Virus record (IMG/VR): IMGVR_UViG_3300009537_002640
Span: 142,496-206,495 of that record
Reading direction: 5' to 3' (one strand)
Length of the DNA: 64,000 nucleotides
In this document: positions 20,710-54,789 of the stretch, one piece after another
How positions within the stretch are numbered: the stretch's first letter is position 1
Layout: each line of letters starts with the position of its first letter
Notes under the pieces: model-generated
The model's database searches: none
What the model was told of the DNA's origin: nothing
Seen by the model: the letters and a program-made list of their open reading frames with translations, nothing else
Made by a program: the position numbers and the translations under genes

Positions 20710-20711
20710 AC

Positions 20712-21044: not shown

Positions 21045-21060
21045 TACACTAATATGAGAA

Positions 21061-21070: not shown

Positions 21071-21071
21071 T

Positions 21072-21371: not shown

Positions 21372-21374
21372 ATC

Positions 21375-38482: not shown

Positions 38483-38836
38483 TTAGTATTCTGCTGTCAC
38501 AGCGAAGCCATTTTTAACCAGGTATTCATTTAGTGTTTCTGAGCTATCTGCTAAATATATGTAGGCGATATAGCGTCCGTATTTGCCAGTTTTATCTTTC
38601 TCAGTTTGCACGACAACATCCTTGTTCAATATCAATCGCTTAACTTCTTCTGTAGCAGCTATGCCCTTTTTGTACTCTTCAGAATCCTTTTTAACGCCAT
38701 GAGTTTCAGGAGTATTTATTCCAGCAAGCCTAACCCTTTCTTTCACATAGACTTTTAGCCCCAAATCTAAATCTAGGTCTACAGTGTCTCCGTCGACTAC
38801 ATTATAGCAATGCGCTTTATAAGTATAGAAATCCAT
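38483..38836 (-). CDS. Thermonuclease (SNase-like) protein, 117 aa
   Basis: VVDGDTV, RVRLAGINTPE, DKTGKYGRYIAYIY and LNEYLVKNGFA SNase motifs; GGAGG RBS. Confidence 0.9.
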   Translation of the reverse strand: MDFYTYKAHCYNVVDGDTVDLDLDLGLKVYVKERVRLAGINTPETHGVKKDSEEYKKGIAATEEVKRLILNKDVVVQTEKDKTGKYGRYIAYIYLADSSETLNEYLVKNGFAVTAEY

Positions 38837-38934: not shown

Positions 38935-39960
38935 TTAGCCTGCTGCTACATCCTTACGGCCAACTGCTACACCACGTGGGTTGACAATACCGATTCCGAT
39001 ATTTTCGTTCACGACCCAACCTAGCTTGAGCTGCTTGGGCTCATCAGCTGGGAGAACTTCAATATCTTGACGGATTGGCATTACACCAACGAACTCAGGG
39101 TCAGCAACACCGAAGATAGTTCCAACAGGAACAATCTTAGAAACGATGATGTCTGCGCCCCAAAGGTGTGCAAAAAGACCAGTCTGTAGGATTTCACGCT
39201 GAGTGACCATATCTACCTCTCCACCAGTGCCAGCTGCCTGACCACCGCCAGAGCCCCAGTTTAGAATATCGTTGAACTCAACGATGTTCATTAGGAACTT
39301 GGTAGTTACTAGGTCCCAACGGTCTACCTGAACTTTAATCTCAGAGAGATCGCGCTTTAGAAGACCTGCATCCGCGATATCCTGTGCAGTATTCTCGCCA
39401 CCGAGAGAATCATCACCTGCGAAATCCAGAGCTGCGAAGATGTTGGCATCCTCTTGTGCCTGAATTTCCTGACGTGCTTTCTGCTGGGCACGGTCGATGA
39501 CGTTAAATCTACGACGCTTCACCTCAGAAATACGTACAGTTGGGTTTGAAACAATCTCAAACTCAGGGACTGTTACACGGTCTGCGAAGACACGAGACTC
39601 GGGTGCGGAGCCGTTGCTAGAAATAACAACTGCGCTCACATCGATATCACGGTCATACACAGGCAGTGCACCTTGTGGTAGGGGGTCTACGACTAGAACT
39701 CGACGACCGACGCCTTGGTAATCCAAGTTACGACGAATTGGGTTCGCCATAGCCTGACCAAGAGCAACCTTTCCTTCCTGAGTCATAAGAGCACGACGAA
39801 CTAGCTCGTCCTTCTGCTCCTCTGTGAAAGAAGGCTGACCAGCAAGATTCTGGTTAGCCGATTGGTTCTGCTGGATGATAGACGCAAACTTTACAATCTG
39901 CGCTAACGCATCACGACTATCAACTGCGTTCAACTCCCCATGTGTATTAAACATACTCAT
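38935..39960 (-). CDS. Major capsid protein (HK97-like fold), 341 aa
   Basis: Start refined to ATG 39960 (GGAGG RBS). PIRRNLDYQGVGRRVLVVDPLPQGA..., PEFEIVSNPTV, RRFNVIDRAQQKARQEIQAQED and C-terminal GWVVNENIGIGIVNP match large-phage MCP patterns; position after protease/scaffold and decoration genes; own terminator. Confidence 0.85.
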   Translation of the reverse strand: MSMFNTHGELNAVDSRDALAQIVKFASIIQQNQSANQNLAGQPSFTEEQKDELVRRALMTQEGKVALGQAMANPIRRNLDYQGVGRRVLVVDPLPQGALPVYDRDIDVSAVVISSNGSAPESRVFADRVTVPEFEIVSNPTVRISEVKRRRFNVIDRAQQKARQEIQAQEDANIFAALDFAGDDSLGGENTAQDIADAGLLKRDLSEIKVQVDRWDLVTTKFLMNIVEFNDILNWGSGGGQAAGTGGEVDMVTQREILQTGLFAHLWGADIIVSKIVPVGTIFGVADPEFVGVMPIRQDIEVLPADEPKQLKLGWVVNENIGIGIVNPRGVAVGRKDVAAG

Positions 39961-40114
39961 GAAAGTACCTCCAAAAATTAACCTACGGCTCTTCTGGTCG
40001 TATATTGGTCCGTCCCATAAGAGTCCATAGAGTATCAATTAGTTTTGATTTTCTTCGTCGGTATAACCGACAGGTGCACAACGAAGTCAAATCAGGTCTT
40101 ACAGAGAATCGAAA

Positions 40115-40142
40115 TGTGGGGCCGGGCAATACCAGCCCCACA
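40115..40142 (-). promoter_or_regulatory. Strong 11-bp stem-loop between decoration-like gene and MCP
   Basis: UGUGGGGCUGG-UAUUGC-CCGGCCCCACA followed by UUUCGAUU; weak terminator or mRNA-stabilising hairpin. Confidence 0.6.
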
Positions 40143-40164
40143 ATCGTATTTAGCTTAAGCTATG

Positions 40165-40878
40165 TTATGCGTTGTGAGTTGCACCGAGATACTGGAACTT
40201 AACTCGGTCAAATGTCTCAGCAGCACCAACTAGCTTGCCAGGGGTGGTTACTAGAGATCCACTACCTGAGGTTTCTACAAACATACCGATTTTGTCAGCT
40301 GCCGCGACTGCCGCAGTAGACACGCTGAGCTTACCTGAAGTAGGCTCACGGTATAGTAGGTCACCTGGTAGAGGAGTATCATTTAGGCCACCGGGTCCAC
40401 CTGGGCTACCAGATGTATTTGGGTCTAGTGATGCATGTAGAGCATCGCTAGAAACCGCGTACAATCCTGGCTTGTCCCACGCTGTCACCTTACCAGAACC
40501 TGCTGCAGTGTGAGGTCCTAGCAAAGAACCGCCACTGGAAGTTGTGGTAGCAAGACCAACCGGCGTACCGATTAGCTCACCAAACAAGGTGCCATAGTGT
40601 GCCTGACCGTCGTCTAGCAAGTAGAAAAGCTTACGAGTCTCAGTTGCAGTATCGGCGATACGAAGCACTGGACGACTTGCAGTAGGGGTACCTACGTCAA
40701 CTTCGTCTGCAACGTAACCGTCGAGAACATCTGATGCTGCCTTTTCGCTTGCACTGTTGGTGCGAGATGCCTCGTCTAGAGTACCAACCTCACCGCCAAG
40801 GACGTTTGCTAGATCTGTGTCTAGGCAGTCAAACTGACCCAAAGGCTGAAGACCTGGCTGTAATAGATATAATGCCAT
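40165..40878 (-). CDS. Putative capsid decoration/cement protein, 237 aa
   Basis: Start refined to ATG 40878 (GGAGG RBS); immediately upstream of MCP; Gly-rich beta protein; shares GSG[KR]xTxWxxxGx[YF] with the 231-aa ORF. Confidence 0.6.
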   Translation of the reverse strand: MALYLLQPGLQPLGQFDCLDTDLANVLGGEVGTLDEASRTNSASEKAASDVLDGYVADEVDVGTPTASRPVLRIADTATETRKLFYLLDDGQAHYGTLFGELIGTPVGLATTTSSGGSLLGPHTAAGSGKVTAWDKPGLYAVSSDALHASLDPNTSGSPGGPGGLNDTPLPGDLLYREPTSGKLSVSTAAVAAADKIGMFVETSGSGSLVTTPGKLVGAAETFDRVKFQYLGATHNA

Positions 40879-40970
40879 TTTGTTATCCTCCAAATTAGTT
40901 TTTGGGTGGTAAATTCTCACTGACGAAGCAAATTCGATATAGAGAACAACCTTCTTATACTTACATCTAA

Positions 40971-40980
40971 ATATTAGTAG
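40971..40980 (-). promoter_or_regulatory. Putative late promoter motif (CTACTAATAT)
   Basis: Intergenic TAYTAATA copy, 93 nt upstream of the decoration-MCP unit. Confidence 0.6.
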
Positions 40981-40994
40981 ATTTCTTTCGCGAC

Positions 40995-42515
40995 TTAGTA
41001 GTTATTTACTATGTTAAATGCTTCAATTAGGGTATTTCGGTCGGTTATTCGGCCATCTGGGGCTACTAAGGCACCAGTCCATTCGTCGGTTTTTGACCTT
41101 TTATTGAAGTCTTGCTCTAATCTTTTCAGGGTCTGTATCGTATTTCGGTCTACTCGTCCAGTTTGCTGTATACCCAAAAGACCTTGTATCTCAGAAACCT
41201 CATTCTTACCAGGCTCTTTAATGGTCATGCCAGGAGTCTTGGATATATCGGCTGAAACACCCAGTCGTTCTGCTAATCCTACCAAAGTATTAGTTGATTC
41301 TTGAACAAAAGTAGTTATCTTCTGACCTAATTGTTTGGCTAATTCTGGATTATCGCTACCCTCTACAACCGTCTGCCAATCTCCAAGAGCGCCGTTGATG
41401 TCATTTATTTCTTTAGACATCTTAGTTACATACATCTGGATTGCCCTTTCTGCATTTTCGCCTTTCAGAGCACTATCTACACCTGCAGAAAGTCTTGCCA
41501 TATCGGATAAGGAGCCTTTAGCTTCATTAACCACTACCCTTCCTCTACCAGATACTTCTAACCTGGATAATTCAGAGGAAAGCCCATTGCTTGCTTTGCT
41601 ATTTTCTGCTGGAGGGTTATCGTCAAACCAACTATATATCTTTAACAACGCTGCCCCACCTGCCAATGCTGCAGCGGACAACCCTAATCTCCTTGCAGTA
41701 TCACCCACAGTTAGACCCATAATTTTCTGTCGAGTGGTTAGCTTTCCACCGCCTGCAATTAGGTCTGCTATTTTGTCTTTTGACATTAGCTTACTTAGTC
41801 GAGCGTTATTCTGAGGATTAGCCAGCCACAATTCCAATTGACGAGATGCCGCAGGATTCCTCTTAAGAGCTATATATTTTCTCACGAATGCCGTGTCAGA
41901 ACCAGATGTGGTTTGCTTCATAATATTCTGTGTCAGATTGAAAGCCTCTTCGTATTTTCCTCGTGCTTGTGCAACACCAGGATGAGTCATTGGGGCATCT
42001 GAGGAGCGTAATACATCAAGAGCACCTCTTACATTACCACTATTAGCATTTTGCCATGCACCAGATAGAGTTTCCATCAACTTTTGATTCTCAGTCACTC
42101 TACCCTGCAAGTCCATCAGCATCTGTTCTGCTTGTTCATGTGCAACTTGGTCTAATTGTTGTGGGTCTACTTTTTTCGTAGGATAAACAGTTCTAGTAAG
42201 CCTTTGAATTTCTCGCTGGTCTTCTAGAATTTCAGCCCTAAGTCTTTGCAAAGCTTTAGATAAGTCGCCGTGTCCAGAGCGAACAAGCTTTGTAACCTCT
42301 GCTCCAGCTTTTTCTCCGAGGTCACTAACCTGTTTAAAATCAGTCACAAGCTTTTCAGCCATTCGGGCAGCACCCTCTGCACTTTCTTCAACTGCTTCTT
42401 TTCCAGCGCGAGCCCACCATTTAGCAGATGCACGAGCAAGATCATCGCTGGCACTACCAAATGCTTTAGCAACAGCTTTAGCTACTGGGCTTACCAACTT
42501 TCTAAGTAGGCCCAC
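40995..42515 (-). CDS. Putative ejection/internal virion protein, 506 aa from GTG (probably the 3' part of a frameshift fusion with 42557-43087)
   Basis: Helical; hydrophobic LGLSAAALAGGAALLKIYSWF; C-terminal PG-binding-like EVSEIQGLLGIQQTGRVDRNT; no RBS before the GTG and the frame stays open upstream past 42590. Confidence 0.7.
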   Translation of the reverse strand: MGLLRKLVSPVAKAVAKAFGSASDDLARASAKWWARAGKEAVEESAEGAARMAEKLVTDFKQVSDLGEKAGAEVTKLVRSGHGDLSKALQRLRAEILEDQREIQRLTRTVYPTKKVDPQQLDQVAHEQAEQMLMDLQGRVTENQKLMETLSGAWQNANSGNVRGALDVLRSSDAPMTHPGVAQARGKYEEAFNLTQNIMKQTTSGSDTAFVRKYIALKRNPAASRQLELWLANPQNNARLSKLMSKDKIADLIAGGGKLTTRQKIMGLTVGDTARRLGLSAAALAGGAALLKIYSWFDDNPPAENSKASNGLSSELSRLEVSGRGRVVVNEAKGSLSDMARLSAGVDSALKGENAERAIQMYVTKMSKEINDINGALGDWQTVVEGSDNPELAKQLGQKITTFVQESTNTLVGLAERLGVSADISKTPGMTIKEPGKNEVSEIQGLLGIQQTGRVDRNTIQTLKRLEQDFNKRSKTDEWTGALVAPDGRITDRNTLIEAFNIVNNY

Positions 42516-42556
42516 AGGTATAGCTGTTTTATGTAGTGGACTTACCCGACTGCTGA

Positions 42557-43087
42557 TTACCCTTCGTCTGTCGGTGCCTCGTCGAAAGGGGGGCCAGCCT
42601 CCTCTGCAAGTAGAGCTTCTAGTTCAGCATCTATGTTGTCTGCAGAATCATTCATGGCACTCAGTGTATCAGACATCTGGGTCACAACTCTTTTCGCTGC
42701 ATCAGTTAGAGAGTTAGCTACATCAGTTGCACCAACTTCTTCTGCAGCTTCAGCCATTTTTACTAGACGAACAACAGTATGAGCATATCTACCCACCAAG
42801 GAGCCGGTTGGGCTTTTATTCAACATTTCTATGAGCTTCTTCTGCTGCTCTACTTGATTTTCTACCAAGCCACCATCACCGCGAGCTTCTGCAACATAGA
42901 CTGGCTCTGGATGAGCCTCCTCTATTATGCTCTTCTCTGGCTGGTCTAGTCTCTTCTTTCGGATAGTTTCTACATCCTCTTGGTAAGGATTAGGCTCTGG
43001 TAATGCGGTCTTCTTAAGACCTAAGACATTAGTTTCAGAAGCAATCTTTAGAAACTCTATCATAACCTCGGAATTTTCCCAATTCAT
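42557..43087 (-). CDS. Internal head protein, 176 aa
   Basis: WENSEVMIEFLKIA N-terminal motif, AHP..VEN motif and helical-hairpin tag, each shared with neighbours. Confidence 0.7.
   Translation of the reverse strand: MNWENSEVMIEFLKIASETNVLGLKKTALPEPNPYQEDVETIRKKRLDQPEKSIIEEAHPEPVYVAEARGDGGLVENQVEQQKKLIEMLNKSPTGSLVGRYAHTVVRLVKMAEAAEEVGATDVANSLTDAAKRVVTQMSDTLSAMNDSADNIDAELEALLAEEAGPPFDEAPTDEG
42584..42603 (-). promoter_or_regulatory. Candidate -1 ribosomal frameshift site (AGGAGG, 7-nt spacer, C CCU UUC)
   Basis: X XXY YYZ heptamer in the 0 frame of the 176-aa ORF; the -1 frame is the open frame of the downstream 506-aa ORF. Confidence 0.5.
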
Positions 43088-43089
43088 AT

Positions 43090-43698
43090 TTAGCTCCTTG
43101 GCCCCATATATCCTTGGGGACCATAATTTTTCGGGTCTAGCGATGGGTCTTTTGGAAGAAACTGAAAAGCACCAGCCATCTCTTCACCCTTCTCTCTGGC
43201 ACCCTCTTCATTTCCACTAGTAAACATATCGTAAATTTCGCCTATCTTGGTAAAGCCAAAAGCAAACAGTAGATACTTAGCTGCACGCCAAAGATTCTTT
43301 AGTAGTGCTCGTGGACTTATAACATATTTCCATATGAACTTAAGCACCACACTTGCGAACGCTTCCTTTACTATCTGGTTTTCCATAGAACTAGCGATTT
43401 TGTTTATTCGTTCATCGTTTAGGTTGGCTGTTGCTGGCATTCCAAAAAGCTGTGTAGTAACACCTTGTTCATCGAGCCATCTACCAAAGTCCTCTAACCC
43501 ATATCCGTAATTAGATAAAACTTTATCAAGGGCAGTTATCATCATTCCGCTCCAACCGAAAACAGATGGGGCGTATGATATCAATCTAAAAAGATTTTGC
43601 CCGGGGCCTTGATCGGTTCTCCACATACCTTGAACCATTTTCTTTATGCCTTCTGCAACAAATGCTCGTTTTGAAATATATCGCATAGCTTTGTCCAT
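43090..43698 (-). CDS. Putative ejection/internal protein with hydrophobic helices, about 202 aa
   Basis: Start refined to 43698 (TAATG coupling); ISKRA and IVKEA motifs; hydrophobic segments. Confidence 0.6.
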   Translation of the reverse strand: MDKAMRYISKRAFVAEGIKKMVQGMWRTDQGPGQNLFRLISYAPSVFGWSGMMITALDKVLSNYGYGLEDFGRWLDEQGVTTQLFGMPATANLNDERINKIASSMENQIVKEAFASVVLKFIWKYVISPRALLKNLWRAAKYLLFAFGFTKIGEIYDMFTSGNEEGAREKGEEMAGAFQFLPKDPSLDPKNYGPQGYMGPRS

Positions 43699-45347
43699 TA
43701 TAGAATCGAATTGCGTCCCTGAAAACGGCCATAGTTCCTCTTTACATAATCTTGTAGCATAGGCATGCTCCAATCAGATGGAGGGGGCAGTCCTCTTGGT
43801 CCCTTAAATACCTGTGACACCAGTCGCACTTGATTCTCTCTACTAAAACCCCTATTAGCTAGCCAAGTTTGTGCCGGTGTTCCATCAATAAACTTGTTAT
43901 TGAGTGCAGCTAAAATTTCTGCACCTGTAGGGTTCCACTTATGAGGCTGCTCTTCAACATCATAGGTTCCGCCACCATACTGAACTCCAGTCTGTCGCTC
44001 TTGTGGAGCTGCACCAGGCTGAGTACTTTGTTGCACTGTCTGTGACAGAGTATTAACCTTTTGGCTTATAGCATTCAATACAGCAGGATTTTTACCAACT
44101 ACCCTATAGTCTGTTTGTGGCACATTCATCCACTGACGCAAACGAGGAGACGAATTCATAAATGTCTCCAGCGCCTTTTGAGTATTTGGTCCATAAATGC
44201 CGTCTTCATTGATTCTGCTTGCGCCAGTACTATATGCCTGGTTAAGATAGTTCAAAGACTGTTGCATGCTTGTTACGGCTGGATTCCTTCTGGACAATTG
44301 TCGCTGAGTCCTCTCTTTCTTAGCCGCTCCAGCTGGCCCCCTAAGAGTAACTTGAGTTCCGTCGCCAAGTGTTAGAGCGCGTTTAGACAACCGCTCCTTA
44401 GAGCTTGCTGTAGTAGCAGCAGTGCCTAAGGCTTTTTCAAACAAGCCATGAAGCATAACTAAACTCTGAACGTTGTTCTTAACATCTTCAAGAGTTGCAC
44501 TCTTTGATGCCAACGCTTCTGCCAAGTTGTATCCTGCTTCTTCGCTCTTATTATCGAATTTAGGAGGTCCGCCAAAGCGCTCAGAAAGCTGGTCATACAT
44601 AGATTTTACTTTCTGCCCAAGCTCAGCAAGGTCCTTATTTAAAGTCTGCCCATATTCCTCGACAGCTTTCTGCATAACGGCCTTTTGTTCAGATGCTGCT
44701 TTTTCTTTTAGCTGTAACATAGCAGTTAGTGTCTTATCAATTGCCTGTTCAGCCTGCTCAGCATCACCAGATATCAAACCACCATAACCCCAATCGGTAA
44801 GTTTTGGCTTCAATTGCGTAGGAAACCACTCCTTAAGGCTAACAAGATACTTTGTAAGTTCTGTTAGAGCATTAAGCTTACCTTTGGTTTGTTGAAGTTT
44901 CTCTTCCTCAGACTCAGGAACATCCTGAACGCCCATAGCCGCCTTAAACTCTTTTAGTTTGCCGGTGACTTTTTCTATCTGAGCTTTGGTTTGTTCGTCC
45001 TTAGGATCTAAGTCCTCAAACCTTTCCACTAAATCATCCAAATTATCATCAGCCAGCTTAGTAGCCTGCCAAACAATAGTAGCTCCAAGAATAAGAGCCA
45101 TTGCCGCCCAGCCTGCTGGTCCTGCAGGAGCAAACATTCCAGCTACTGCAGCGGCTTTACCGGTGACACCAAGAGCTAATGCGGCTTTAGCAGCACCAAT
45201 AACTGCTGCCTCCGTAGCTACATTGCTTAATATAGCTTCGCCCCAGTCAGAACTAGCGGCTTCTTTCACTATAGCAGGGGCCATAGCAATACGCGCATAT
45301 TCCTGCATGATTTCGCTATTTTCAAACTGAGACATATAGCTCTCCAT
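43698..45347 (-). CDS. Putative ejection protein with membrane-like segment and peptidoglycan-binding domain, 549 aa
   Basis: FENSEIMQEYARIA motif; about 45-aa Ala/Gly hydrophobic stretch; VTSMQQSLN...DGIYGPNTQKAL PG-binding-1 signature; LSKRA linker. Confidence 0.7.
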   Translation of the reverse strand: MESYMSQFENSEIMQEYARIAMAPAIVKEAASSDWGEAILSNVATEAAVIGAAKAALALGVTGKAAAVAGMFAPAGPAGWAAMALILGATIVWQATKLADDNLDDLVERFEDLDPKDEQTKAQIEKVTGKLKEFKAAMGVQDVPESEEEKLQQTKGKLNALTELTKYLVSLKEWFPTQLKPKLTDWGYGGLISGDAEQAEQAIDKTLTAMLQLKEKAASEQKAVMQKAVEEYGQTLNKDLAELGQKVKSMYDQLSERFGGPPKFDNKSEEAGYNLAEALASKSATLEDVKNNVQSLVMLHGLFEKALGTAATTASSKERLSKRALTLGDGTQVTLRGPAGAAKKERTQRQLSRRNPAVTSMQQSLNYLNQAYSTGASRINEDGIYGPNTQKALETFMNSSPRLRQWMNVPQTDYRVVGKNPAVLNAISQKVNTLSQTVQQSTQPGAAPQERQTGVQYGGGTYDVEEQPHKWNPTGAEILAALNNKFIDGTPAQTWLANRGFSRENQVRLVSQVFKGPRGLPPPSDWSMPMLQDYVKRNYGRFQGRNSIL

Positions 45348-46969
45348 TAGATATTGATGAATTGCTTTATTTGATCAGGGGTTAGGCTTTTAACTGTTCC
45401 TGCAAACTCCTGCTCTAATTTGCCCATTGCAGCTTCTGGGGTAAAGAAACGAATCATAGATTTATAAGATTCTCTAGCCCTAGTACGCAAAGCTTGTTCT
45501 AATTCTGGTGCTCGGCGAAGAGGAAGTCTAGGAAATCTTTTTTGAAACGTCTGAAGCATCAACTGCTCTGCCGCTTGTGGACTCGGACCCTGTGGTTGAG
45601 CCTCCCCCGGCGCCGTCTCTTCTTTCTTTGCTGTTCCAGCACCCTGATTCTGTACTGCATCAAATATAGCTCTAAAGCCAGCCTTACTCTTTACGGCTGC
45701 CCATGCATCTGGATACTTTTGGCGTAACACGTTAGCAAGCTGCCTATCAAAAGGTTGATTTGCTTTCGGCTGTAAGCCCACCATAGTTCTAAGTCGATTT
45801 TGCAGCTGAGTTAGCCTCATCTTTTTCTTATCTTGAGTAGTAGCAGTACCAGATTCATCGAGATTAATTTCTCCTGCTCCAGCAGCCTCCCAACCCTCTG
45901 GGGTTGTAGGAAACCCTGTTTGAGGGTCAACCTTCTGCTGAGTAGTTGCTACTCCAGAATCTTGCTGTTGTCTGCGTTGAGCTAACATTTGTTGTTCTGC
46001 TTGGAGATTAGGAGACCATTGTGCAACCATTGGCTGCACAACACTAGGTAGGTCAGGAGCATTTTTGCCCCATCGAGATTGAAGTTTTTGTAGTGCACTC
46101 ATTGCTTCAGTCAAAGTAGGCATTGAGGTTCCTTGCCACTCACGAATTACCATAGGCTTATTGAATCTCCCACCCAAATCAGCTTGGTTTAGAGCATCCA
46201 ATACCTGCTTCTTAAATTGTTGTGCCGCAGGACTCGCAGCAACCTTTACTTTTTTTTTTAACAGTGAGTCAACACGGTCAGCCGCCTTAACGTACCCAAG
46301 CTTATCCAGTCGGTCAGCTAGATTTAGAAGAGCTGCGTAAGTTCCCTTGGGCATGCTTAACGCAACCTCTACATCCTTCTTTTGCTGCTCGACGATGGTC
46401 TCTACCAAATTCTCATCAGTTTTGCTGTGAGTAAGTTCGGTCCTAGTGCCACCACCCGGATGAGCCTTATCTACTAGCTGTTCGCCAGTCTCGCCAGATA
46501 CATCATAAAGCTTTTCTTCTGCGGTTTTCATATTCTCCATCTCTGCGGATTGTTGTTTGGTTAGGTCCAACTCAGGAAGTTTGGCGTGGGTAAGAGGCGT
46601 AACCCAAGCGTTTGTTACTTCTGTGTGAAACTTTTGAGCTGCAGCCTGTACTTCTGGATTATTAGCGTATGCTTTGGTCCAATGAGCAACTACGGCGTCA
46701 CGAATTCGACCCAAAAATAAGCCAAGCCTCTGATTAGGAATCTTGCCATAGTATTTGGCATGAAACTTATTCATAGCCTGAGTAGCATCCATAAATGGAT
46801 TCTTTGAGCGCATGAGCTGATTAATGGTTTGTCTCATCTCATTAGCAGCTGGACCAGCTTCTTTCAACAGCTCCTCATCTGAAGCTTGTTTGACTAAGCC
46901 CTTGTTAGCAGCAATGTTTGCAAACTCTCTCATCACTTCGCTATCATCAAAATTGTAATTGTGTCGCAT
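45347..46969 (-). CDS. Putative internal/ejection protein, 540 aa
   Basis: FDDSEVMREFANIA motif, AHPGGG-TELTHSKTD motif, helical-hairpin tag, Gln-rich linkers, degenerate PG-binding-like segment. Confidence 0.7.
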   Translation of the reverse strand: MRHNYNFDDSEVMREFANIAANKGLVKQASDEELLKEAGPAANEMRQTINQLMRSKNPFMDATQAMNKFHAKYYGKIPNQRLGLFLGRIRDAVVAHWTKAYANNPEVQAAAQKFHTEVTNAWVTPLTHAKLPELDLTKQQSAEMENMKTAEEKLYDVSGETGEQLVDKAHPGGGTRTELTHSKTDENLVETIVEQQKKDVEVALSMPKGTYAALLNLADRLDKLGYVKAADRVDSLLKKKVKVAASPAAQQFKKQVLDALNQADLGGRFNKPMVIREWQGTSMPTLTEAMSALQKLQSRWGKNAPDLPSVVQPMVAQWSPNLQAEQQMLAQRRQQQDSGVATTQQKVDPQTGFPTTPEGWEAAGAGEINLDESGTATTQDKKKMRLTQLQNRLRTMVGLQPKANQPFDRQLANVLRQKYPDAWAAVKSKAGFRAIFDAVQNQGAGTAKKEETAPGEAQPQGPSPQAAEQLMLQTFQKRFPRLPLRRAPELEQALRTRARESYKSMIRFFTPEAAMGKLEQEFAGTVKSLTPDQIKQFINI

Positions 46970-46982
46970 GATAATACCCCTA

Positions 46983-48014
46983 TTATCGGAAACGAGCTAG
47001 TCGCTTCTCTAGTAATTGTGCCGCCGAATTTATATCCTTGGCCCGACCCTTCTGAATCATTTGTTGTAACACCCTCATTAAGGTCCCTGTATCTTTATAG
47101 GGTCTTGGTACCTTTGGGTTTTGAAATACCTTCTGTCGTATTGCTTGTGCCGCCTGCTGTAATTGAGCAGGATTGGCCTGCTGTGCCGGTCTTTGCTGTT
47201 GAACAGGTTGTCGTGGAGCTTGCTGAGTCTGCTGTTGCTGCTTTCTAGCTTGCCATTGCTGTTGCATTCTTTGCTGAGGTGCAGTATTACGAGGGGGATT
47301 TTTCTCCATTTGGCCCATCTCATCCCATATATCTGCGCCCTTAGCTATAGATTCTTTGATTCCACGAATAACTTTCTCAACCTCATATGCCTCTGAATGC
47401 CTTCCTTCTGCACCTAGACGATATGCAGTGTCCTCTAGACGATTCAGAAGTATCAAACTAAGCCCTTCAGGACCAGAACCTTCTTCTGGAACACTTACAT
47501 CATGTGCCTCATCGCTAGAGCAACGAGGGCAGTCACAATCAGGCCCACATGTACACTTGCCTTCTTCACAACCGCAGTCACATTTTGCCTTAGCATCCTC
47601 AGCGTCTTGTTCCATTAGCTCTTTTAGCTTTTCTTCAGCGTCTTCCACTGTTTCTTCATCGGGCTCTTTCTTTGCAGGAACTTCATAAACCAATCTTTCA
47701 TCTTCGCTCTTCTCTTTGAGCTTTGGCAAACTACTCAAATCATAGAAATCCCCAGCGACTTTTTCAAAATCACCAGGTAAAATGACTGATTTAAGTTGGC
47801 GATGAAAGTATGCCATGTCATTTGAACCAGCTGTTTGTCCAAGGGCAACACGATGACGCATTTCTTTGATGAAATCGCCTAGTAATGTATTAACCTCTTT
47901 GCTAGAGGCCAACTTTTGTGCTACAATACGCTGCCTTTCATCATCAAGTAGATGAGCTACTATATTGATAAAAGTGTCCTTGTCGGATGCATGTATATAG
48001 TCAAAAAGATTCAT
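46983..48014 (-). CDS. Internal head protein with Cys cluster and Gln-rich segment, 343 aa
   Basis: CDCGCEEGKCTCGPDCDCPRC; degenerate hairpin tag; Q-rich linker. Confidence 0.65.
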   Translation of the reverse strand: MNLFDYIHASDKDTFINIVAHLLDDERQRIVAQKLASSKEVNTLLGDFIKEMRHRVALGQTAGSNDMAYFHRQLKSVILPGDFEKVAGDFYDLSSLPKLKEKSEDERLVYEVPAKKEPDEETVEDAEEKLKELMEQDAEDAKAKCDCGCEEGKCTCGPDCDCPRCSSDEAHDVSVPEEGSGPEGLSLILLNRLEDTAYRLGAEGRHSEAYEVEKVIRGIKESIAKGADIWDEMGQMEKNPPRNTAPQQRMQQQWQARKQQQQTQQAPRQPVQQQRPAQQANPAQLQQAAQAIRQKVFQNPKVPRPYKDTGTLMRVLQQMIQKGRAKDINSAAQLLEKRLARFR

Positions 48015-48023
48015 CGTTGCTCC

Positions 48024-48719
48024 TTAGAACCATAAAAATTCAAGAGTTTGGTCAATTCCACTCGGTGGCCCTGTAACCATTGCTATACCAGGATGACTTG
48101 CAGTTGGTGGTGCTGTAGTCAGCTTTCCCTCTGCATTGACAAACAATTGGGCATTTACCACATATCGTTGTCTTGTATCAAACTGGTCTGTCTGAAAGAT
48201 TCCTCTTGCGAACCAAATTGTCATTCTTCCGCTACCTACTGTAGTGTTGTCTCCAGGAATATTTGGTATTCTGTAGACATAGCTAACAATCACACGTACA
48301 GAGTCCGGAATCTGGTCGCCGTCTGAATCATAATTTAGCTCTGTGCCCGCTGGAGCTGTAATCACCCCATTTACATCGTTGAGCGAAAGCCCCTCGACAT
48401 CAGCAACAAAGCTGTTTCTAACCACATTAGCAAATCTAAGAGTTTGCATTTCATCTTTGGCGGATACATAAGTGTACCCATCAGCAGCTAAAACACCAAC
48501 CGCTGGTATAATAACCACTTCGTCTGTTACTGGTGCTGTAAAAGCCGAAGTATTAATGTCATCTATAATACCAAACGGTGCTGTGCCATCCGAAACGCCA
48601 CAAACAATTTCATTGCCTATAACTTTTAGCTGAGCTATTTGCCCTGGTTGAAACTCCGCAGTGGGGTCAACCGGAAAGCTTAGAGGCAAAGTATTACCTA
48701 CTTGAATCAGTCTTAACAT
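48024..48719 (-). CDS. Putative capsid decoration/cement protein (paralogue of 40165-40878), 231 aa
   Basis: FQPGQIAQL...PFGIIDD and GSGRMTIWFARGIF...LFVNAEGKLTT pattern typical of beta-tulip-like decoration proteins. Confidence 0.6.
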   Translation of the reverse strand: MLRLIQVGNTLPLSFPVDPTAEFQPGQIAQLKVIGNEIVCGVSDGTAPFGIIDDINTSAFTAPVTDEVVIIPAVGVLAADGYTYVSAKDEMQTLRFANVVRNSFVADVEGLSLNDVNGVITAPAGTELNYDSDGDQIPDSVRVIVSYVYRIPNIPGDNTTVGSGRMTIWFARGIFQTDQFDTRQRYVVNAQLFVNAEGKLTTAPPTASHPGIAMVTGPPSGIDQTLEFLWF

Positions 48720-48748
48720 AAATTAGCCTCGCAAGTGGTCAAAAACAA

Positions 48749-49096
48749 TTATTCAGTTTCTGCTTGCAAATCGCGAACGATTACACGCAACGCTTCATCA
48801 ACTGCTGAAGAAGCATCATCTGCACCAGCCTCATCCAACTCTGTAGCAAGCTTGGTAAGTTCCTGAAGAACACCTAGAACGACAGCTTTCTTTTTCTTCT
48901 TGTCATCCTTTTTGTCTTCTTTCTTCTTATCCTTCTTATCTTCCTTGTCGTCCTTCTTTTTCATAAAAGGAGGAAGCTTCTTATCATCCTTGTCGTCGTC
49001 CTTCTCATCATCTTCCTTTGCAGCAGTAACCATTAGCCCCTGCTTGCTCAAGAGATTGTGAAGTTCCAACATCATTTCATCGCCAGATCGTGACAT
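48749..49096 (-). CDS. Small K/D-rich head protein with hairpin tag, about 115 aa
   Basis: Start refined to 49096 (GGAG RBS); K/D/E low-complexity tract, then LTKLATELDEAGADDASSAVDEAL. Confidence 0.65.
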   Translation of the reverse strand: MSRSGDEMMLELHNLLSKQGLMVTAAKEDDEKDDDKDDKKLPPFMKKKDDKEDKKDKKKEDKKDDKKKKKAVVLGVLQELTKLATELDEAGADDASSAVDEALRVIVRDLQAETE

Positions 49097-49097
49097 G

Positions 49098-50486
49098 TTA
49101 TTCTCCTCTGAGTTTATCAATAAATTGACCTTCTGGACCATAATCTTCCATGTTCCACAAGTGCTCGCGGCTCTTAGTGTTTACTAAGTAGCCAGTATCT
49201 AAATCTTCTTCCGATAATTCCTCGACATCGGTTTCTCTATCAACATCTTCTTCGTTCTTAGGTTCCCATTCTTCTTCAACAAATGTCCCTTCTGGGGCCT
49301 CCTCTAAGGTTCCAAACATCGGGTCAACCATATATCGGCGCTCATCTTCCTCTCCCGGACGTCTTTTCAGCTCCTTGAAAACTCCGTGTGGCTCCCAACC
49401 TTTATCGGTGGGGTCTTTTTCTCGTTCTTCTTTAGGTCGTAAGTCTACAAAACGCTCCCAGTCTGCCGCAATCGCATCTAGTTCTGTAGCTAGTTCGTGC
49501 TGGCCTTTGACATCCAGAACTGTTGCCACTTTTGCAAGCCTCATGGCTATTTTCAAATATAATCCTTTGTTCATATTAGCCTCATGAAGAGAACGTCCAC
49601 CAGTAAGTTTTATGTACTCTTTTCCTAAATTATTTCTCCAGCCCTGTACGGCTCCTCTAAATTTACGCATCATTGGGGACTTAGGATCAGCGCCCTTATC
49701 CAACAGTTGCTTATATTTTTCCATCTCTATAGCTATGCGTGTTTTAAGTACCTTTACAACCCTATCTAGAAAAAAGTTTTTGTAACGTTCTGTCTCTTTC
49801 CCATCACCTATCTGAGCCCACATACCAATTCTTCTACCTAGCTTCTGAAATTTACTCTGGGTATTTAAATCTTTAGCAAACAGCTGTCCTTTTTCATCCG
49901 ATTCAGCCACCCTAACGATTGCTTCAAATAAATTTGGCAAATGTCTGGCTAGACTATGTGCCACACCTGACTTTTCCCAAGTATTAGATGCGTCTAGAAG
50001 CACCAGCGGATCATTTTCTATAAGAAACTTTGCACCCTCATGTATATATGGCTCAAATTGTGGGTCTGTTCTTCTACTATACTGATTAAAAAAGTAGATT
50101 ATTCGTTCTGGATTACCCATAACCTCGTTATCAAGCACCCAGCCAGTAATTGGATCGTAAAATGTCTCCTTCATATATCTGCCAGCCAAATATGCCATTG
50201 GATTTCGTCTGGCCACAGTAGCAGCATTTTGAGCATCTTCCAATTCTTCCGAACCACTATAAGTTTTTAGAACATCATCTAGGCTTAATTCATGCATCAT
50301 AGTAGGAGATATGCTTAACGATGATGAGGGAGTTTCTATGTACTTCACTCCAGGTGTCTGAGTAATATCTTCACCACTATACTCTACTGGTTCTTGCGTC
50401 TCAAATGTAGGAAGTGGTGGAATAGGAACTGGCAACTGGTCTTCGTCGTCACCCGACCACTTGAATATCATATTGCCTATTCGCAT
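49098..50486 (-). CDS. Putative internal head protein, 462 aa
   Basis: Helical core, hairpin tag LAKVATVLDVKGQHELATELDAIA, acidic tail. Confidence 0.65.
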   Translation of the reverse strand: MRIGNMIFKWSGDDEDQLPVPIPPLPTFETQEPVEYSGEDITQTPGVKYIETPSSSLSISPTMMHELSLDDVLKTYSGSEELEDAQNAATVARRNPMAYLAGRYMKETFYDPITGWVLDNEVMGNPERIIYFFNQYSRRTDPQFEPYIHEGAKFLIENDPLVLLDASNTWEKSGVAHSLARHLPNLFEAIVRVAESDEKGQLFAKDLNTQSKFQKLGRRIGMWAQIGDGKETERYKNFFLDRVVKVLKTRIAIEMEKYKQLLDKGADPKSPMMRKFRGAVQGWRNNLGKEYIKLTGGRSLHEANMNKGLYLKIAMRLAKVATVLDVKGQHELATELDAIAADWERFVDLRPKEEREKDPTDKGWEPHGVFKELKRRPGEEDERRYMVDPMFGTLEEAPEGTFVEEEWEPKNEEDVDRETDVEELSEEDLDTGYLVNTKSREHLWNMEDYGPEGQFIDKLRGE

Positions 50487-50498
50487 TAGCCATCCTCA

Positions 50499-50717
50499 TT
50501 AATTCATTTCTTTAGGTTGCTGCTTATCAGCGACCCATGAATCCGCATAAAATTCAAAGTAGCCTGCGATTTCTTCTTCACTCAGGCCCTTATTTCGTAA
50601 ATCTTCTATCTCAATTTGCATTTCCAAATCTGTTAACAGATTCTTCATATTGTCAGCGACTAAGTTGAACATAACGAGTCTCTCGATGTAAGGAGAGGCG
50701 GAGTGCCATAATGACAC
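50499..50717 (-). CDS. Small hypothetical protein, 72 aa
   Basis: GGAG RBS; intact ORF. Confidence 0.5.
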   Translation of the reverse strand: MSLWHSASPYIERLVMFNLVADNMKNLLTDLEMQIEIEDLRNKGLSEEEIAGYFEFYADSWVADKQQPKEMN

Positions 50718-50760
50718 TCCGCCCTTCGTATGAATTCTGCTCCTGAATACTAGCCCTTAA

Positions 50761-53700: not shown

Positions 53701-54789
53701 TAAAGCAGGAGGAGCCTCGTCTGTTTCAGTATTGCCGATGCCGAATTTGGCAGCTAATACCTCTTCGATTTTTTCTTTTAGAGCAGGGTTGGTTACAGCC
53801 TTCAATGCCGCGACCAATTCACCCATATCCATATTTTCTAGACCATGTATGGGTGAGCTTTTAGCCTCTACTCTTTTAGTCTTTTGTTCGAGTTTCATTA
53901 GCGTGTTAAGCTTAGTTTGCATTTCGTTGATGTTGTCAGCAAGCGCTTGTAGTTCAGTTGGGTTTACACAGGCACCAACTAGCAACTCGTCAATACGCTC
54001 TTGTTTTTGTTCAGCGTAATTCTGCAAGCTTGCGACTATTTGTCGGATTTTTGCCAGACCATCAGCGCCATTAACTACGAGGCTTAGCTCGATTGGGCTT
54101 AGGTCTAGGTTCACTTCGCCATAATTTGTGCGTCCACGAACATGATGACAATAGTCTCGTTCGGTTCTCGCTACATGGCCACATTCGGTGCATACGGAGC
54201 GACCGACTGCCGTACCCATTGATACGCAATTAGCATATCCGGTTTCTACTTTGCGTGCTAGGTCAGGGTAATTCTTCCTATCTAACGCAAATAAAGCATG
54301 AACCCTCTTAAACTTAGGGTCATAGTAAGTATCGATTATTATTCCACGAATGCCGTCTACGCTATCACTCTTGTGGTCTTTGCATAGTGGCTTTCCTACC
54401 CAGTTCTTGTAGGCTTTTAGCAGCTCATCTTCAGGAAAAATGTCACCATTAGCATTCTTGTAGGGCTTTAGTCCATCAGGAGATTCCCATTTCACAGAGT
54501 GCTCGTTGCCCTTTACCTTAATAGGCACGAAAGACCCCTTAGCTGGCTTACCATTAGAAGCTAGAACGGGCTCACCTGTATCCTGGTCTATCAAACATGC
54601 TTCAGCAGCATGCATCATAATAGCGTGGCCATAAAGAAAGTCACTAGCTCTTGGAGCAATCCTCTTTAGCTTCTTGGCTAACTTAACAAACCTTTTGGCG
54701 ATTTGTTCGTCCGCTAGAGCTTCTTTCGGTGTCATCAGATTTGTGTCTGGTGAAAAGCTTAGATTCTCTCCGATTTTCCTAATAGCCAT
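50761..54789 (-). CDS. Prohead (maturation) protease fused to a large scaffold region, 1342 aa
   Basis: N-terminal HK97/herpes-type protease signatures: NGDIFPEDEL, KPLCKDH (H139), VSMG (S190), CTECG..YCHH zinc site, IELSLV..GAD; then about 1000 aa of acidic, K/D/E-rich and coiled-coil sequence. Confidence 0.85.
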   Translation of the reverse strand: MAIRKIGENLSFSPDTNLMTPKEALADEQIAKRFVKLAKKLKRIAPRASDFLYGHAIMMHAAEACLIDQDTGEPVLASNGKPAKGSFVPIKVKGNEHSVKWESPDGLKPYKNANGDIFPEDELLKAYKNWVGKPLCKDHKSDSVDGIRGIIIDTYYDPKFKRVHALFALDRKNYPDLARKVETGYANCVSMGTAVGRSVCTECGHVARTERDYCHHVRGRTNYGEVNLDLSPIELSLVVNGADGLAKIRQIVASLQNYAEQKQERIDELLVGACVNPTELQALADNINEMQTKLNTLMKLEQKTKRVEAKSSPIHGLENMDMGELVAALKAVTNPALKEKIEEVLAAKFGIGNTETDEAPPALPATGGGSEPSVSPMAGNGEGTYRTTTTPISVEPSQRLASLEGDGNLGVLFNEIRLLRSKIEKLSKSFNELKTVSKEDDNMNSARLRARAKARRAYWLGGGGINEPTPGKPKYEKEEADKIRDTEDKQMVGEPLETGSEGLHPGDEGRTWETRNLGGGKADKKKAEIEERKLRRQALLEQVQKTDKDAAEDGKLTEAQLQERRLRRRAYWLGGGGINEPTPGKEKYPKEEADKIRDNEDKHLQGIYDMGGTDGMVPGDEKVKKMWLRARLRAKFTKVADDQGNLVKDASRWDVYAGDKLILTATGKEIFDDQLDENWDYLSSKDYGKDIIRHIRTEGFDEVSYLLKGAQDPLAPGGADPLAGGAPAPGGDAPAPEAAPAAPEGEAPAPEKKEDEPDLKGKVEAGLTKIETALDDIRKAVDEGGEKLVDIEVKVDEEGEGGSESPMEQTLAFRDEAMEVHSLLDESADELALVSEALDKAEDLDGETKGRVLSAAVQALADSETLLAQAEVVLAKKKKDDDEDEDDKEDKKKKDKKKEAAKKKDDDKEDEKADKKDKDEDDKEDKKKKEAAKKKKKDEDEDDEDEKEDKKSEKSDAEKKAAELLEQALRVRAQNRAALLAKAMGDMDMMGMGDEMDYALTDADEASLMKLLQEEKQEKGPEGELTHPDLAKDKESDEDEEDEYEKDEKKKKKDEDDADAPMCAEDHAHDESCGGAMMADDGDFAVDEALDSVMAARKAERDALLAQAGDILGKYELDLGKAENATQKEYFEAHPGGKGTTTELTHTKTDGAHVETISEIHDVMRDVAESGPRNVREAAALIQEAIVKGALKAEDVDRLVAEGKVDSAAASYWKKFWAQGPDTGSFGADLSKEFASKKKEADNGEYKTKLRRAYAVGLQAQEKGLIASTQASLEGYVDQLMNFDDAAFESNKRVVANYNSRKGGSLPRVGADGAGQSMTVTASPEPVNAPSLNEQLAQLNWR

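What the first reader, a model, noticed from the sequence alone, without database searches (positions are those of the whole stretch)
42515..42620. Candidate programmed -1 frameshift fusing the 176-aa ORF to the 506-aa ejection-like ORF
Seen: near the end of the 176-aa ORF the mRNA reads AGGAGG-CUGGCCC-C CCU UUC, a canonical X XXY YYZ heptamer (42590-42584) with an SD-like hexamer 7 nt upstream. The -1 frame is open into the 506-aa ORF, whose GTG lacks an RBS. The bridging peptide (RRGTDRRRVISSRVSPLHKTAIPVG) contains the K-T-A motif typical of head proteins here. The ~697-aa fusion would give the 506-aa ORF the same F/W-x-x-SE[VI]M-x-E N-terminal motif that its 540-aa and 549-aa neighbours have. 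Established: -1 frameshifts at such heptamers make lambda gpG/gpGT and E. coli DnaX gamma. Inference: two stoichiometrically linked internal proteins. Alternative: a sequencing indel in the C6 run splitting one gene.
Basis: partly seen in the sequence, partly recalled or inferred. Interest (0 to 1): 0.8.

Follow-up and report, generated by a model that had tools for sequence, protein, structure and literature searches.

The report
Conserved -1 frameshift in jumbo-phage head gene
A giant phage makes a short protein and a long fusion protein from one head-assembly gene by letting ribosomes slip back one base at C CCU UUC; relatives conserve the slip site and a hairpin after it, so it is a real new example of a known trick.

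Summary
The 176-aa ORF (42557..43087, -) and the "506-aa ORF" are one gene read in two frames. C CCU UUC (42590-42584) sits in X XXY YYZ register.

In 19 independent split loci from other metagenomes the heptamer, the 5-nt spacer and the hairpin are all kept. The hairpin shows compensatory changes. The heptamer's first C is the wobble base of codons for about ten different amino acids.

The -1 frame encodes a conserved peptide ([VI]SPLxKxA) upstream of any start codon. Start codons are not conserved, and in two loci the first one lies more than 400 nt downstream. Single-ORF relatives (633-801 aa) read straight through the same junction, so the 697-aa fusion is a genuine product.

These fused relatives form one clade. 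They keep the heptamer and hairpin and have a -1 stop 0-1 codons later, so there the slip would make the short product (dnaX-like).

A sequencing error is excluded by this conservation.

Function is inferred: a head-module protein with a shared N-terminal motif and a probable K-x-A maturation site. The arrangement would load a large cargo domain at a fixed ratio, Gag-Pol style. It is a new member of a known kind.

The parts
42557..43087 (-). Short ORF (176 aa), the 0-frame product. It has an N-terminal W-x-x-SEVM-x-EF-x-KIA motif, then LKK-T-A, then a conserved helical domain. It ends 8 codons after the slip site.
   Evidence: It is 69-85% identical in L002/L004/L006. The family has at least 183 members at E<=0.001. 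107 of the 120 listed representatives end 0-14 aa after a PF/PL/FF/SF dipeptide. AlphaFold model is helical, mean pLDDT 68.6.
42598..42603 (-). SD-like AGGAGG, 7 nt upstream of the heptamer. A possible local enhancer, not conserved across the family.
   Evidence: SD-like strings 6-11 nt upstream occur in roughly half of the 19 split loci (read by eye). They overlap Glu/Asp codons. No test was done.
42584..42590 (-). Slippery heptamer C CCU UUC. In this window only, a second in-register heptamer C CCC CCU at 42593-42587 overlaps it. A slip at either gives the same peptide.
   Evidence: CCCTTTN is present in 16 of 19 split loci and in all 7 fused loci (5 long, 2 distant). The X position is C in 16/19 split loci although it is the wobble base of codons for many different amino acids, and the two preceding codon positions are highly variable (entropy 1.57 and 1.52 vs 0.88).
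42579..42583 (-). Spacer of 5 nt (GACGA) between the heptamer and the stem-loop.
   Evidence: the spacer is exactly 5 nt in 19/19 split loci and 6 nt in 5/5 long fused loci.
42538..42578 (-). Stem-loop. Outer helix GGC (42578-76) pairs with GUC (42541-39). Internal loop is A on one side and GUAA on the other. Inner helix CCGAC (42574-70) pairs with GUCGG (42550-46). The 19-nt loop holds the 0-frame stop TAA (42559-57).
   Evidence: The covariance model built on 9 other loci gives one hit in the window, exactly here (25.1 bits, E 8e-5). 92.2% of cells are paired against 80.6 +/- 1.7 in shuffles (0/500). 30 cells changed on both sides against 12.2 +/- 3.0 (0/500). Pairing is 13-60% when partners are slid.
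40995..42584 (-). The -1 frame part of the long product: 529 codons from CGA (42584-82), plus the stop. All-alpha, with a weak C-terminal PG_binding_1-like motif.
   Evidence: it aligns to fused P0141 residues 141-633, starting 12 codons upstream of the GTG. AlphaFold mean pLDDT 75.2. PG_binding_1 matches in 6 of 34 family members, best E 1e-4.
42522..42545 (-). Codons for V-S-P-L-H-K-T-A, the conserved junction motif [VI]SP[LI]xKxA. Probable prohead-protease cleavage site (inferred). Its first codons also form the 3' side of the stem-loop.
   Evidence: The motif is present in all split loci in the -1 frame and in all long fused proteins in frame. Related LHK-x-A occurs in the distant L008 and L022.
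42513..42515 (-). GTG that the mechanical ORF list gives as the start of the '506-aa ORF'. Most likely an internal Val codon, not a start.
   Evidence: No SD upstream. The codon is GTA in L002. The first possible starts in relatives are scattered: -46 nt (an upstream GTG in L035), +23 to +95 nt in most loci, and +125 to +443 nt from the 0-frame stop in others.

Best explanation
One head-module gene of a phage-G-like jumbo phage is decoded in two ways.

Most ribosomes read the 0 frame and terminate at TAA 42559-57, giving a 176-aa protein. A fraction pauses on the stem-loop that begins 5 nt after C CCU UUC. With tRNA-Pro and tRNA-Phe in the P and A sites they slip one base back onto CCC UUU and continue in the -1 frame for 529 more codons. 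The result is a 697-aa fusion (...AGPPF-RRGTDRRRVISSRVSPLHKTA...).

Shown by sequence comparison:
- the slip site, spacer and hairpin are conserved at the nucleotide level, with compensatory changes;
- the -1 frame is coding before any start codon;
- single-ORF relatives prove that the fusion is the native architecture.

Inferred:
- The first ~28 residues are shared with two neighbouring proteins. Together with the N-terminal domain they take the protein into the prohead.
- The [LIV]-x-K-x-A sites are cut by the prohead protease, which would free the large C-terminal part.
- The frameshift efficiency fixes the ratio of carrier to cargo-bearing chains, as in Gag/Gag-Pol.
- In one clade a 1-nt longer spacer puts both parts in one frame while heptamer and hairpin are kept. 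There the same slip would end translation 0-1 codons later and give the short protein, as in dnaX.
For: (1) Register and open frame.

(2) Split conserved. Six loci were found through homologues and more through collection scans. All 19 distinct split loci have a long -1 ORF (471-603 codons where complete) opening 1-21 codons before the heptamer. The 0-frame stop lies 0-42 nt after the heptamer.

(3) No usable start. The first ATG/GTG/TTG of the -1 ORF is at +407 nt (L009), +443 (L038), +245 (L013) and +125 (L017), after conserved residues. The window's GTG lacks an SD.

(4) Heptamer: CCCTTTC/T/A in 16/19 split loci, TTTTTTC in one, and U UUU tetramer variants in two. The wobble-position C is conserved over variable codons.

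(5) In E. coli, C_CC.U_UU.C and C_CC.U_UU.U are in the most efficient class, and U_UUC and U_UUU are the best tetramers after A_AAG. Stimulatory structures start 5-8 nt downstream (PMC4066793).

(6) Hairpin. In my fixed-register count 101 of 120 cells pair, against 25-68 when slid and 76 +/- 3.5 with partners shuffled (0/2000). Covariance model R1, built from 9 loci, finds exactly one hit in each of 15 further loci, at the expected place. It finds nothing else in 298 kb except one E=0.89 hit. On the tree I read at least 3 independent CG to UA double changes at pair 2.

(7) Fused relatives P0131, P0141, P0155, P0156, P0171 and P0179. The two frame pieces of the window align to P0141 residues 3-~130 (the local alignment runs on weakly to 152) and 141-633.

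(8) Fused loci keep C CCT TTT, a 6-nt spacer and the hairpin, with a -1 stop 0-1 codons on.
Against: There is no direct evidence of the product. Read and transcript pile-ups could not be made (look-up of sequencing runs closed), and there is no proteome or reporter data, so efficiency is unknown.

The hairpin is modest. Single-sequence folding energies are not better than shuffles (window z = +0.69 over 111 nt; z from -2.0 to +0.9 in 19 loci). RNAalifold on the plain MAFFT alignment found nothing.

The outer helix never varies, so it is supported only by G-C/G-U alternation at one pair.

Two close relatives (L004 A CCU UUU, L006 G UCU UUU) have lost the X XXY half of the heptamer.

The functional story (capsid targeting, K-x-A cleavage, cargo) rests on motif sharing and enrichment only.
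Confidence: 0.86

Rival explanations
1. Two separate genes. The 506-aa protein starts on its own at GTG 42515 (or by termination-reinitiation after the TAA), and the conserved sequence between them is a regulatory RNA.
For: Gene callers annotate two genes in every split locus. A GTG/ATG/TTG exists within about 20-95 nt of the stop in most loci. There is indeed a conserved RNA structure in the interval.
Against: Start codons are not positionally conserved: GTG in the window is GTA in L002, and ATG in L002 is GTA in the window. The first possible starts are 125-443 nt downstream in L009, L013, L017 and L038, inside conserved protein sequence. There is no SD at the window's GTG. Changes between the 0-frame stop and the putative starts are mostly synonymous in the -1 frame. 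Fused relatives align from 12 codons upstream of the GTG.
Confidence: 0.06
2. Transcriptional slippage. RNA polymerase drops one base in the C/T run, so a fraction of mRNAs encode the fusion in a single frame.
For: The window has a C6 U3 run. Slippage-based dnaX expression is known in Thermus (from established knowledge).
Against: Most loci have only C3 T3 (CTCCCTTTC), far shorter than the runs known to cause productive slippage. What is conserved is an X XXY YYZ register relative to the 0 frame, plus a hairpin at 5-6 nt. That is the geometry of ribosomal slippage, not of polymerase slippage.
Confidence: 0.04
3. Artefact or decay. An assembly or sequencing indel in the C6 run, or a recently broken gene.
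For: Homopolymer run at the site in this window. Fused single-ORF relatives exist.
Against: There are 19 distinct split loci from different samples and assemblers, 42-85% identical at protein level. All have the same frame relation, a conserved 0-frame stop shortly after, and intact long -1 ORFs. 107 of 120 family representatives end right after the dipeptide. The split forms are the majority state on the tree, and the long fused forms are one nested clade.
Confidence: 0.02

Closest known systems
E. coli dnaX (tau/gamma) -1 frameshift
   Same: A slippery heptamer followed by a stem-loop about 6 nt downstream, with an upstream SD-like enhancer, in a bacterial translation system. Two products share an N-terminus in a set ratio. 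The fused clade here (heptamer + hairpin + -1 stop 0-1 codons later) has the same truncating geometry as dnaX.
   Different: In the window and in most relatives the shift extends the protein by 529 residues instead of truncating it. The heptamer is C CCU UUC, not A AAA AAG. There is no homology. The upstream SD-like element is not conserved here.
Phage lambda G/GT tail assembly chaperone frameshift
   Same: A phage morphogenesis gene with a short major product and a longer -1 fusion, conserved across many phages although the sequences diverge.
   Different: This gene lies in the head module, between the protease-domain protein and the major head protein, not between the tail tube and tape measure genes. 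The extension is three times the length of the short product. A covarying hairpin is part of the signal. There is no sequence similarity.
Capsid-gene frameshifts: T7 10A/10B and Lactobacillus phage A2 gp5A/5B (cited in PMC10885494)
   Same: A -1 frameshift in a head gene gives a C-terminally extended minor virion component.
   Different: There the shifted gene is the major capsid protein itself. Here the major head protein is a separate gene (38935..40038, phrog_2522).
Gag/Gag-Pol of retroviruses and totiviruses (Giardiavirus CCCUUUA, PMC8230311) and West Nile virus NS1' (C_CCU_UUU, PMC11797035)
   Same: The same heptamer family with a downstream structure. The proposed logic is also the same: an assembly domain made in excess, a minority carrying a large C-terminal cargo, and release by a maturation protease.
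   Different: Those are eukaryotic RNA viruses, and no homology exists. Protease release and co-assembly are only inferred for the phage.
Capsid-targeting propeptides of T4 internal proteins, cleaved by the prohead protease
   Same: A short N-terminal motif is shared by several head-module proteins (three per locus). It is followed by a short conserved site ([LIV]-x-K-x-A) that also occurs near the N-terminus of the major head protein (IVK-F-A).
   Different: The motif sequence and the presumed cleavage rule differ (T4 cuts after L/I-x-E, from established knowledge). Nothing here has been tested biochemically.

Membership tests
Programmed -1 ribosomal frameshift signal (bacterial heptamer + stem-loop type) | X XXY YYZ heptamer in register with the upstream (0) frame | tested here: met
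   C CCT TTC at 42590-42584. CCCTTTN is in register in 16/19 split loci and all 7 fused loci (5 long, 2 distant). This motif class is highly efficient in E. coli (PMC4066793).
Programmed -1 ribosomal frameshift signal (bacterial heptamer + stem-loop type) | The -1 frame is open across the site and leads into a long ORF that cannot be initiated on its own | tested here: met
   The frame opens 1-21 codons before the heptamer. The first starts are scattered, up to +443 nt from the 0-frame stop. No SD at the window's GTG.
Programmed -1 ribosomal frameshift signal (bacterial heptamer + stem-loop type) | Stimulatory RNA structure starting 5-8 nt downstream, supported by covariation | tested here: met
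   Spacer 5 nt (19/19 split) or 6 nt (5/5 long fused). The covariance model recovers 15 non-seed loci. Caveat: single-sequence folding energies are unremarkable.
Programmed -1 ribosomal frameshift signal (bacterial heptamer + stem-loop type) | Nucleotide-level conservation of the signal beyond what the proteins require | tested here: met
   The wobble C of the heptamer is conserved over about ten different codons. GGC and RTAAGYCC are invariant, including synonymous sites (Val always GTA/ATA, Ser always AGY).
Programmed -1 ribosomal frameshift signal (bacterial heptamer + stem-loop type) | The trans-frame protein is actually made (junction peptide, reporter activity) | not testable with these tools
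   No proteome or reporter data. Indirect support: single-ORF relatives align across the junction.
dnaX-type truncating frameshift (applies to the fused clade L015, L016, L047, L053, L054) | Heptamer and stimulator inside a long ORF, with a -1 stop immediately after the shift | tested here: met
   C CCT TTT, a 6-nt spacer, a hairpin with covariation inside the clade, and a -1 stop 0-1 codons after. Whether the short product is made was not testable.
Tail assembly chaperone G/GT-type frameshift | Gene pair located between the major tail/tube gene and the tape measure gene | tested here: not met
   The pair lies between a protein with a head-maturation-protease domain (50761..54789, phrog_18299) and the major head protein (38935..40038, phrog_2522).
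Capsid-protein frameshift (T7 10A/10B, A2 gp5) | The frameshifted gene is the major capsid protein | tested here: not met
   Neither piece matches any PHROG or Pfam capsid family. The major head protein is a separate gene.
Protease-processed, capsid-targeted internal head proteins | Shared N-terminal targeting motif followed by a protease site; the protein is present in virions | tested here: inconclusive
   The motif is shared by three proteins per locus in six phages. [LIVMH]K.A is enriched in the head module: 16 hits in about 5.1 k residues against 7 in about 16 k elsewhere (my tally). Cleavage and virion presence were not testable.

The most novel reading that the evidence does not exclude
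The cassette is a ratio-setting device for loading a large cargo protein into a phage head, a bacterial-virus counterpart of Gag/Gag-Pol. Evolution has flipped its polarity at least once. A 1-nt change in the spacer turned 'slip to extend' into 'slip to truncate', while selection kept the heptamer and hairpin. So both products are needed in both configurations. That would make this family a natural experiment on how frameshift efficiency and product ratio are tuned.
Probability: 0.35. Interest if true: 0.75.

Novelty: new member of a known kind. Interest (0 to 1): 0.62.

Why it matters
Well-documented programmed frameshifts in tailed phages are mostly confined to tail chaperones and a few capsid genes. 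This one is a complete, covariation-supported -1 signal: heptamer, fixed spacer and stem-loop. It sits in an unannotated gene family of uncultured phage-G-like jumbo phages, and the family has more than 180 members.

Current gene callers split the gene and misplace the start of the large protein, by up to about 140 codons in L009 and L038. The covariance model and the [VI]SPLxKxA junction motif give a direct way to correct those annotations.

The coexistence of split and fused forms with the same signal makes the family a good system for studying how frameshift polarity and efficiency evolve. It also gives a testable handle on how jumbo phages load internal head proteins.

Tried and rejected
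- Megablast and tblastn of the region and of both proteins against 50,697 phage records: no match. No cultured relative carries the gene.
- Bacillus phage G, the closest isolate by major head protein (53.5% identity), has an annotated frameshift in the same module. It is in its endolysin gene 22/23 at A AAA AAG, which is unrelated. Its gp20/gp21 pair is not a visible homologue by eye.
- The first IMG/VR scan with alignment A1 chose poor patterns and found only 2 loci. It was repeated with A3.
- RNAalifold on the MAFFT alignment found only 3 trivial pairs, because loops of 3-25 nt were misaligned. Single-sequence folds had insignificant z-scores. The helix became visible only after anchoring on the invariant flanks.
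- Profile searches of both domains against PDB sequences found nothing meaningful. Foldseek of the 506-aa model against PDB gave no hit with E <= 0.1. The Atlas search gave only weak PG_binding leads.
- Three encoding-contig look-ups returned no DNA.
- Literature searches found no description of this frameshift.
- Rejected ideas: initiation at ATC/ATT/ATA in the bridge, because no such codon is conserved and L006 has ACT there; and the upstream SD as the main stimulator, because it is not conserved.
Full report
**What is in the sequence**

The window is part of a 206-kb IMG/VR contig (IMGVR_UViG_3300009537_002640). All large ORFs are on the - strand. The finding lies in a head module. Going downstream it contains:
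- a 1342-aa protein with a head-maturation-protease domain (50761..54789, phrog_18299);
- several unannotated ORFs;
- the 540-aa and 549-aa ORFs;
- a ~200-aa ORF;
- the 176-aa ORF (42557..43087);
- the '506-aa ORF' (40995..42515);
- a 251-aa ORF;
- the major head protein (38935..40038, phrog_2522, E 1e-78).

The closest isolate by major head protein is Bacillus phage G (53.5% identity).

- C CCT TTC at 42590-42584 is in X XXY YYZ register.
- AGGAGG lies 7 nt upstream.
- The -1 frame is open into the 506-aa ORF.
- The GTG has no Shine-Dalgarno sequence, while most neighbouring genes do.

Of 17 junctions in the window where another frame continues for at least 80 codons, only this one has in-register slippery heptamers.

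**Relatives keep the split**

The 506-aa protein has three close homologues of 496-510 aa. Their contigs have a 176-187-aa gene immediately upstream in the +1 frame relative to them. A profile of the short protein finds at least 183 relatives, many on contigs of 50-480 kb. Scans of IMG/VR and JGI metagenomes gave further loci.

In 19 distinct split loci, with the short protein 42-85% identical to the window's:
- the -1 frame opens 1-21 codons before the heptamer;
- it runs for 471-603 codons where the contig allows;
- the 0-frame stop follows 0-42 nt after the heptamer.

In L010, L014 and L006 a -1 stop lies one codon before the heptamer, so the frame change is confined to the heptamer-to-stop interval.

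Of the 120 listed family representatives, 107 end 0-14 residues after a PF, PL, FF or SF dipeptide.

**The long ORF has no start of its own**

The first ATG/GTG/TTG in the -1 ORF is not conserved. The window's GTG is GTA in L002, and L002's ATG is GTA in the window. In L009, L038, L013 and L017 the first candidate lies 407, 443, 245 and 125 nt past the 0-frame stop.

The peptide [VI]SP[LI]xKxA is conserved in the -1 frame upstream of nearly all these candidates. Between the window, L002, L004 and L006 the differences in that stretch are mostly synonymous in the -1 frame: ATC/ATT, AGC/AGT, AGT/AGC, CCA/CCC, CTA/TTG, AAA/AAG.

**The fusion is the native architecture**

A profile search of 1.84 billion representatives with the long protein found single-ORF relatives of 633-801 aa. 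Their N-terminal 130-140 residues are the short protein's domain. Their junction reads PF-xx-G[TA]-...-[VI]SPLxKxA. That is the same pattern as the window's predicted trans-frame peptide, PPF-RR-GT-...-VSPLHKTA.

The window's 0-frame piece (M1-F168) aligns to P0141 residues 3 to about 130 (E 1e-40; the local alignment runs on weakly to 152). Its -1 piece aligns to residues 141-633 (E 6e-51), beginning 12 codons upstream of the GTG.

**The slip site is selected as nucleotides**

Across the 19 split loci the heptamer is:
- CCCTTTC in 11;
- CCCTTTA in 4;
- CCCTTTT in 1;
- TTTTTTC in 1;
- ACCTTTT in L004 and GTCTTTT in L006. These two keep the U UUU tetramer.

The first C is the wobble base of codons for Pro, His, Asn, Val, Leu, Ser, Phe, Ile and Arg, plus Cys and Tyr in fused forms. 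It is C in 16 of 19 split loci, while the two preceding positions of that codon are highly variable.

Where the 0 frame reads CCT TTA (Pro-Leu), the -1 frame still reads CCC TTT. So what is kept is the heptamer, not the 0-frame residue.

In E. coli, C_CC.U_UU.C and C_CC.U_UU.U belong to the most efficient heptamer class. U_UUC and U_UUU are the best tetramers after A_AAG (PMC4066793). C_CCU_UUU is the West Nile virus site (PMC11797035), and CCCUUUA is the proposed Giardiavirus Gag-Pol-type site (PMC8230311).

**A conserved stem-loop follows**

Downstream of the heptamer the alignment shows invariant GGC after exactly 5 nt. Further on there is an invariant R-TAAG-Y-CC, in which even synonymous sites are frozen: Val is always GTA/ATA and Ser is always AGY.

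Anchoring on these two strings shows a two-part hairpin:
- GGC pairs with GYC (the middle pair is G-C or G-U).
- There is a 1 x 4 nt internal loop (N / RUAA).
- An inner helix of 3-7 bp differs in sequence from locus to locus: CCGAC/GUCGG, CCGG/CCGG, CCUA/UAGG, CUCGU/ACGAG, CUC/GAG, CCC/GGG, CCUGC/GCAGG, CUUGC/GCGAG.
- The loop is 3-25 nt and usually contains the 0-frame stop.

In a fixed register, 101 of 120 inner-helix cells pair. This compares with 25-68 when the partner is slid by 1-3 nt, and with 76 +/- 3.5 when partners are exchanged among loci (0 of 2000 shuffles reach the observed value).

A covariance model built from nine equal-length loci gave the following:
- it found exactly one hit in each of 15 other loci, at the expected place;
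- it found one hit in the window, at 42578-42538;
- it found nothing else in 298 kb apart from one E=0.89 hit.

On the resulting alignment:
- 92.2% of cells pair, against 80.6 +/- 1.7 in shuffles;
- 30 cells carry changes on both sides, against 12.2 +/- 3.0;
- the covariation score is 0.39 against 0.21 (each 0/500).

That alignment is fitted to the model. The independent fixed-register count guards against this. Pair 2 is CG in 18 rows and UA in 7, with no mismatch. On the protein tree I read this double change as having arisen at least three times.

Caveats: single-sequence folding energies are not exceptional, and the outer helix never varies.

**Polarity flip**

The five long fused loci form one clade nested among the split forms (support 95/90). 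They keep C CCT TTT, have a 6-nt spacer instead of 5, and keep the hairpin with covariation inside the clade. They have a -1 stop 0-1 codons after the heptamer.

The simplest reading is that a 1-nt change in the spacer fused the frames. The slip, still selected, now yields the short protein, which is the dnaX arrangement. This is inference from sequence only.

Two distant, shorter fused relatives (L008, L022) keep C CCT TTC but have no hit to the hairpin model.

**What the proteins may do (inferred)**

- The first ~28 residues of the short protein (W-x-x-SEVM-x-EF-x-KIA...L-K-K-T-A) are shared with the 540-aa and 549-aa neighbours, and with their counterparts in five other phages.
- The major head protein has IVK-F/Y-A near its N-terminus.
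- [LIVMH]K.A occurs 16 times in about 5.1 k residues of the head module and 7 times in about 16 k residues elsewhere, by my tally. It never occurs in the 3811-aa ORF.
- The junction motif ...PLHK-T-A fits the same pattern.

This suggests an N-terminal capsid-targeting segment and K-x-A maturation sites. Cleavage at the junction would release the large C-terminal part inside the head.

The short protein is predicted to be helical with disordered linkers. The long part is all-alpha. It has no PDB relative by sequence or fold and only a weak PG_binding_1-like C-terminal motif (6 of 34 members; Atlas leads).

**Rivals**

- An assembly indel or a pseudogene is excluded by the 19 independent split loci.
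- Independent initiation is contradicted by the missing or scattered starts and by coding conservation upstream of them.
- Transcriptional slippage is unlikely, because most loci have only C3U3 and because what is conserved is a codon register plus a hairpin at 5-6 nt.

**Verdict**

This is a new, well-supported member of the class of programmed -1 frameshifts, in a previously undescribed jumbo-phage head-gene family.

Noticed in passing
window 43698..46969 (-) and homologous ORFs in L004, L006, L009, L010, L053, L054: Three proteins per locus share an N-terminal motif: F-[DE]-x-S-[ET]-[VI]-[ML]-x-x-[FY]-A-x-[IL]-[AM], followed within about 10 residues by [LIM]-[IVK]-K-x-A. In the window they are the 540-aa, 549-aa and 176-aa ORFs. 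It looks like a common capsid-targeting propeptide with a cleavage site.
   Followed up: partly
window 38935..54789 (-), head module: The motif [LIVMH]K.A is concentrated in head-module proteins: major head protein IVKFA, five copies in the 540-aa ORF, and four in the protease-domain protein. It is absent from the 3811-aa ORF.
   Followed up: partly
window 42587..42593 (-): A second in-register slippery heptamer, C CCC CCU, overlaps the conserved one. It is specific to this contig (the C6 run). A slip there gives the same peptide.
   Followed up: partly
window 5801..17236 (-): A single 3811-aa ORF. No analysis was done.
   Followed up: no
window 43696..43700 and 45345..45349 (-): The ATG of the 549-aa ORF overlaps the stop of the 540-aa ORF and has no SD. 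The listed 227-aa TTG ORF most likely starts at the ATG at 43698, which overlaps the stop of the 549-aa ORF. That would give about 202 aa, matching the 184-204-aa homologues. Both cases look like translational coupling.
   Followed up: partly
window 38935..40038 (-): The mechanical TTG start of the major head protein is probably wrong. The ATG at codon 27 has a GGAGG 6 nt upstream, and homologues start MFNTHGELNA...
   Followed up: partly
window 38483..38836 (-); L053:5971-6735 and 7296-8109; contig of P0097: Homing-endonuclease-like genes sit next to the head genes. In the window a 117-aa ORF (phrog_452 endonuclease, E 1e-36) lies just after the major head protein. LAGLIDADG_2 genes occupy the equivalent region in two relatives.
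   Followed up: no
L055:13866-15535 (Bacillus phage G, record 19865-21534): Phage G has an annotated two-piece CDS (endolysin genes 22/23) in its head-gene region, with GTAAAAAAG (A AAA AAG) at the end of gene 22. It is a different frameshift in an unrelated gene.
   Followed up: partly
L018/L042, L037, L035, and proteins P0100, P0074, P0064: Some homologues carry a variable, often Cys-rich insert (CxxC-type strings) between the helical domain and the slip site. P0064 has Pfam hits PF23455 and PF00684.
   Followed up: no
L055:11766-12254 (phage G gp20): gp20 of phage G begins MSKKISRLKKTALMP. This is the same L-K-K-T-A string as in the window's short protein, although the proteins are otherwise not visibly related.
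   Followed up: no
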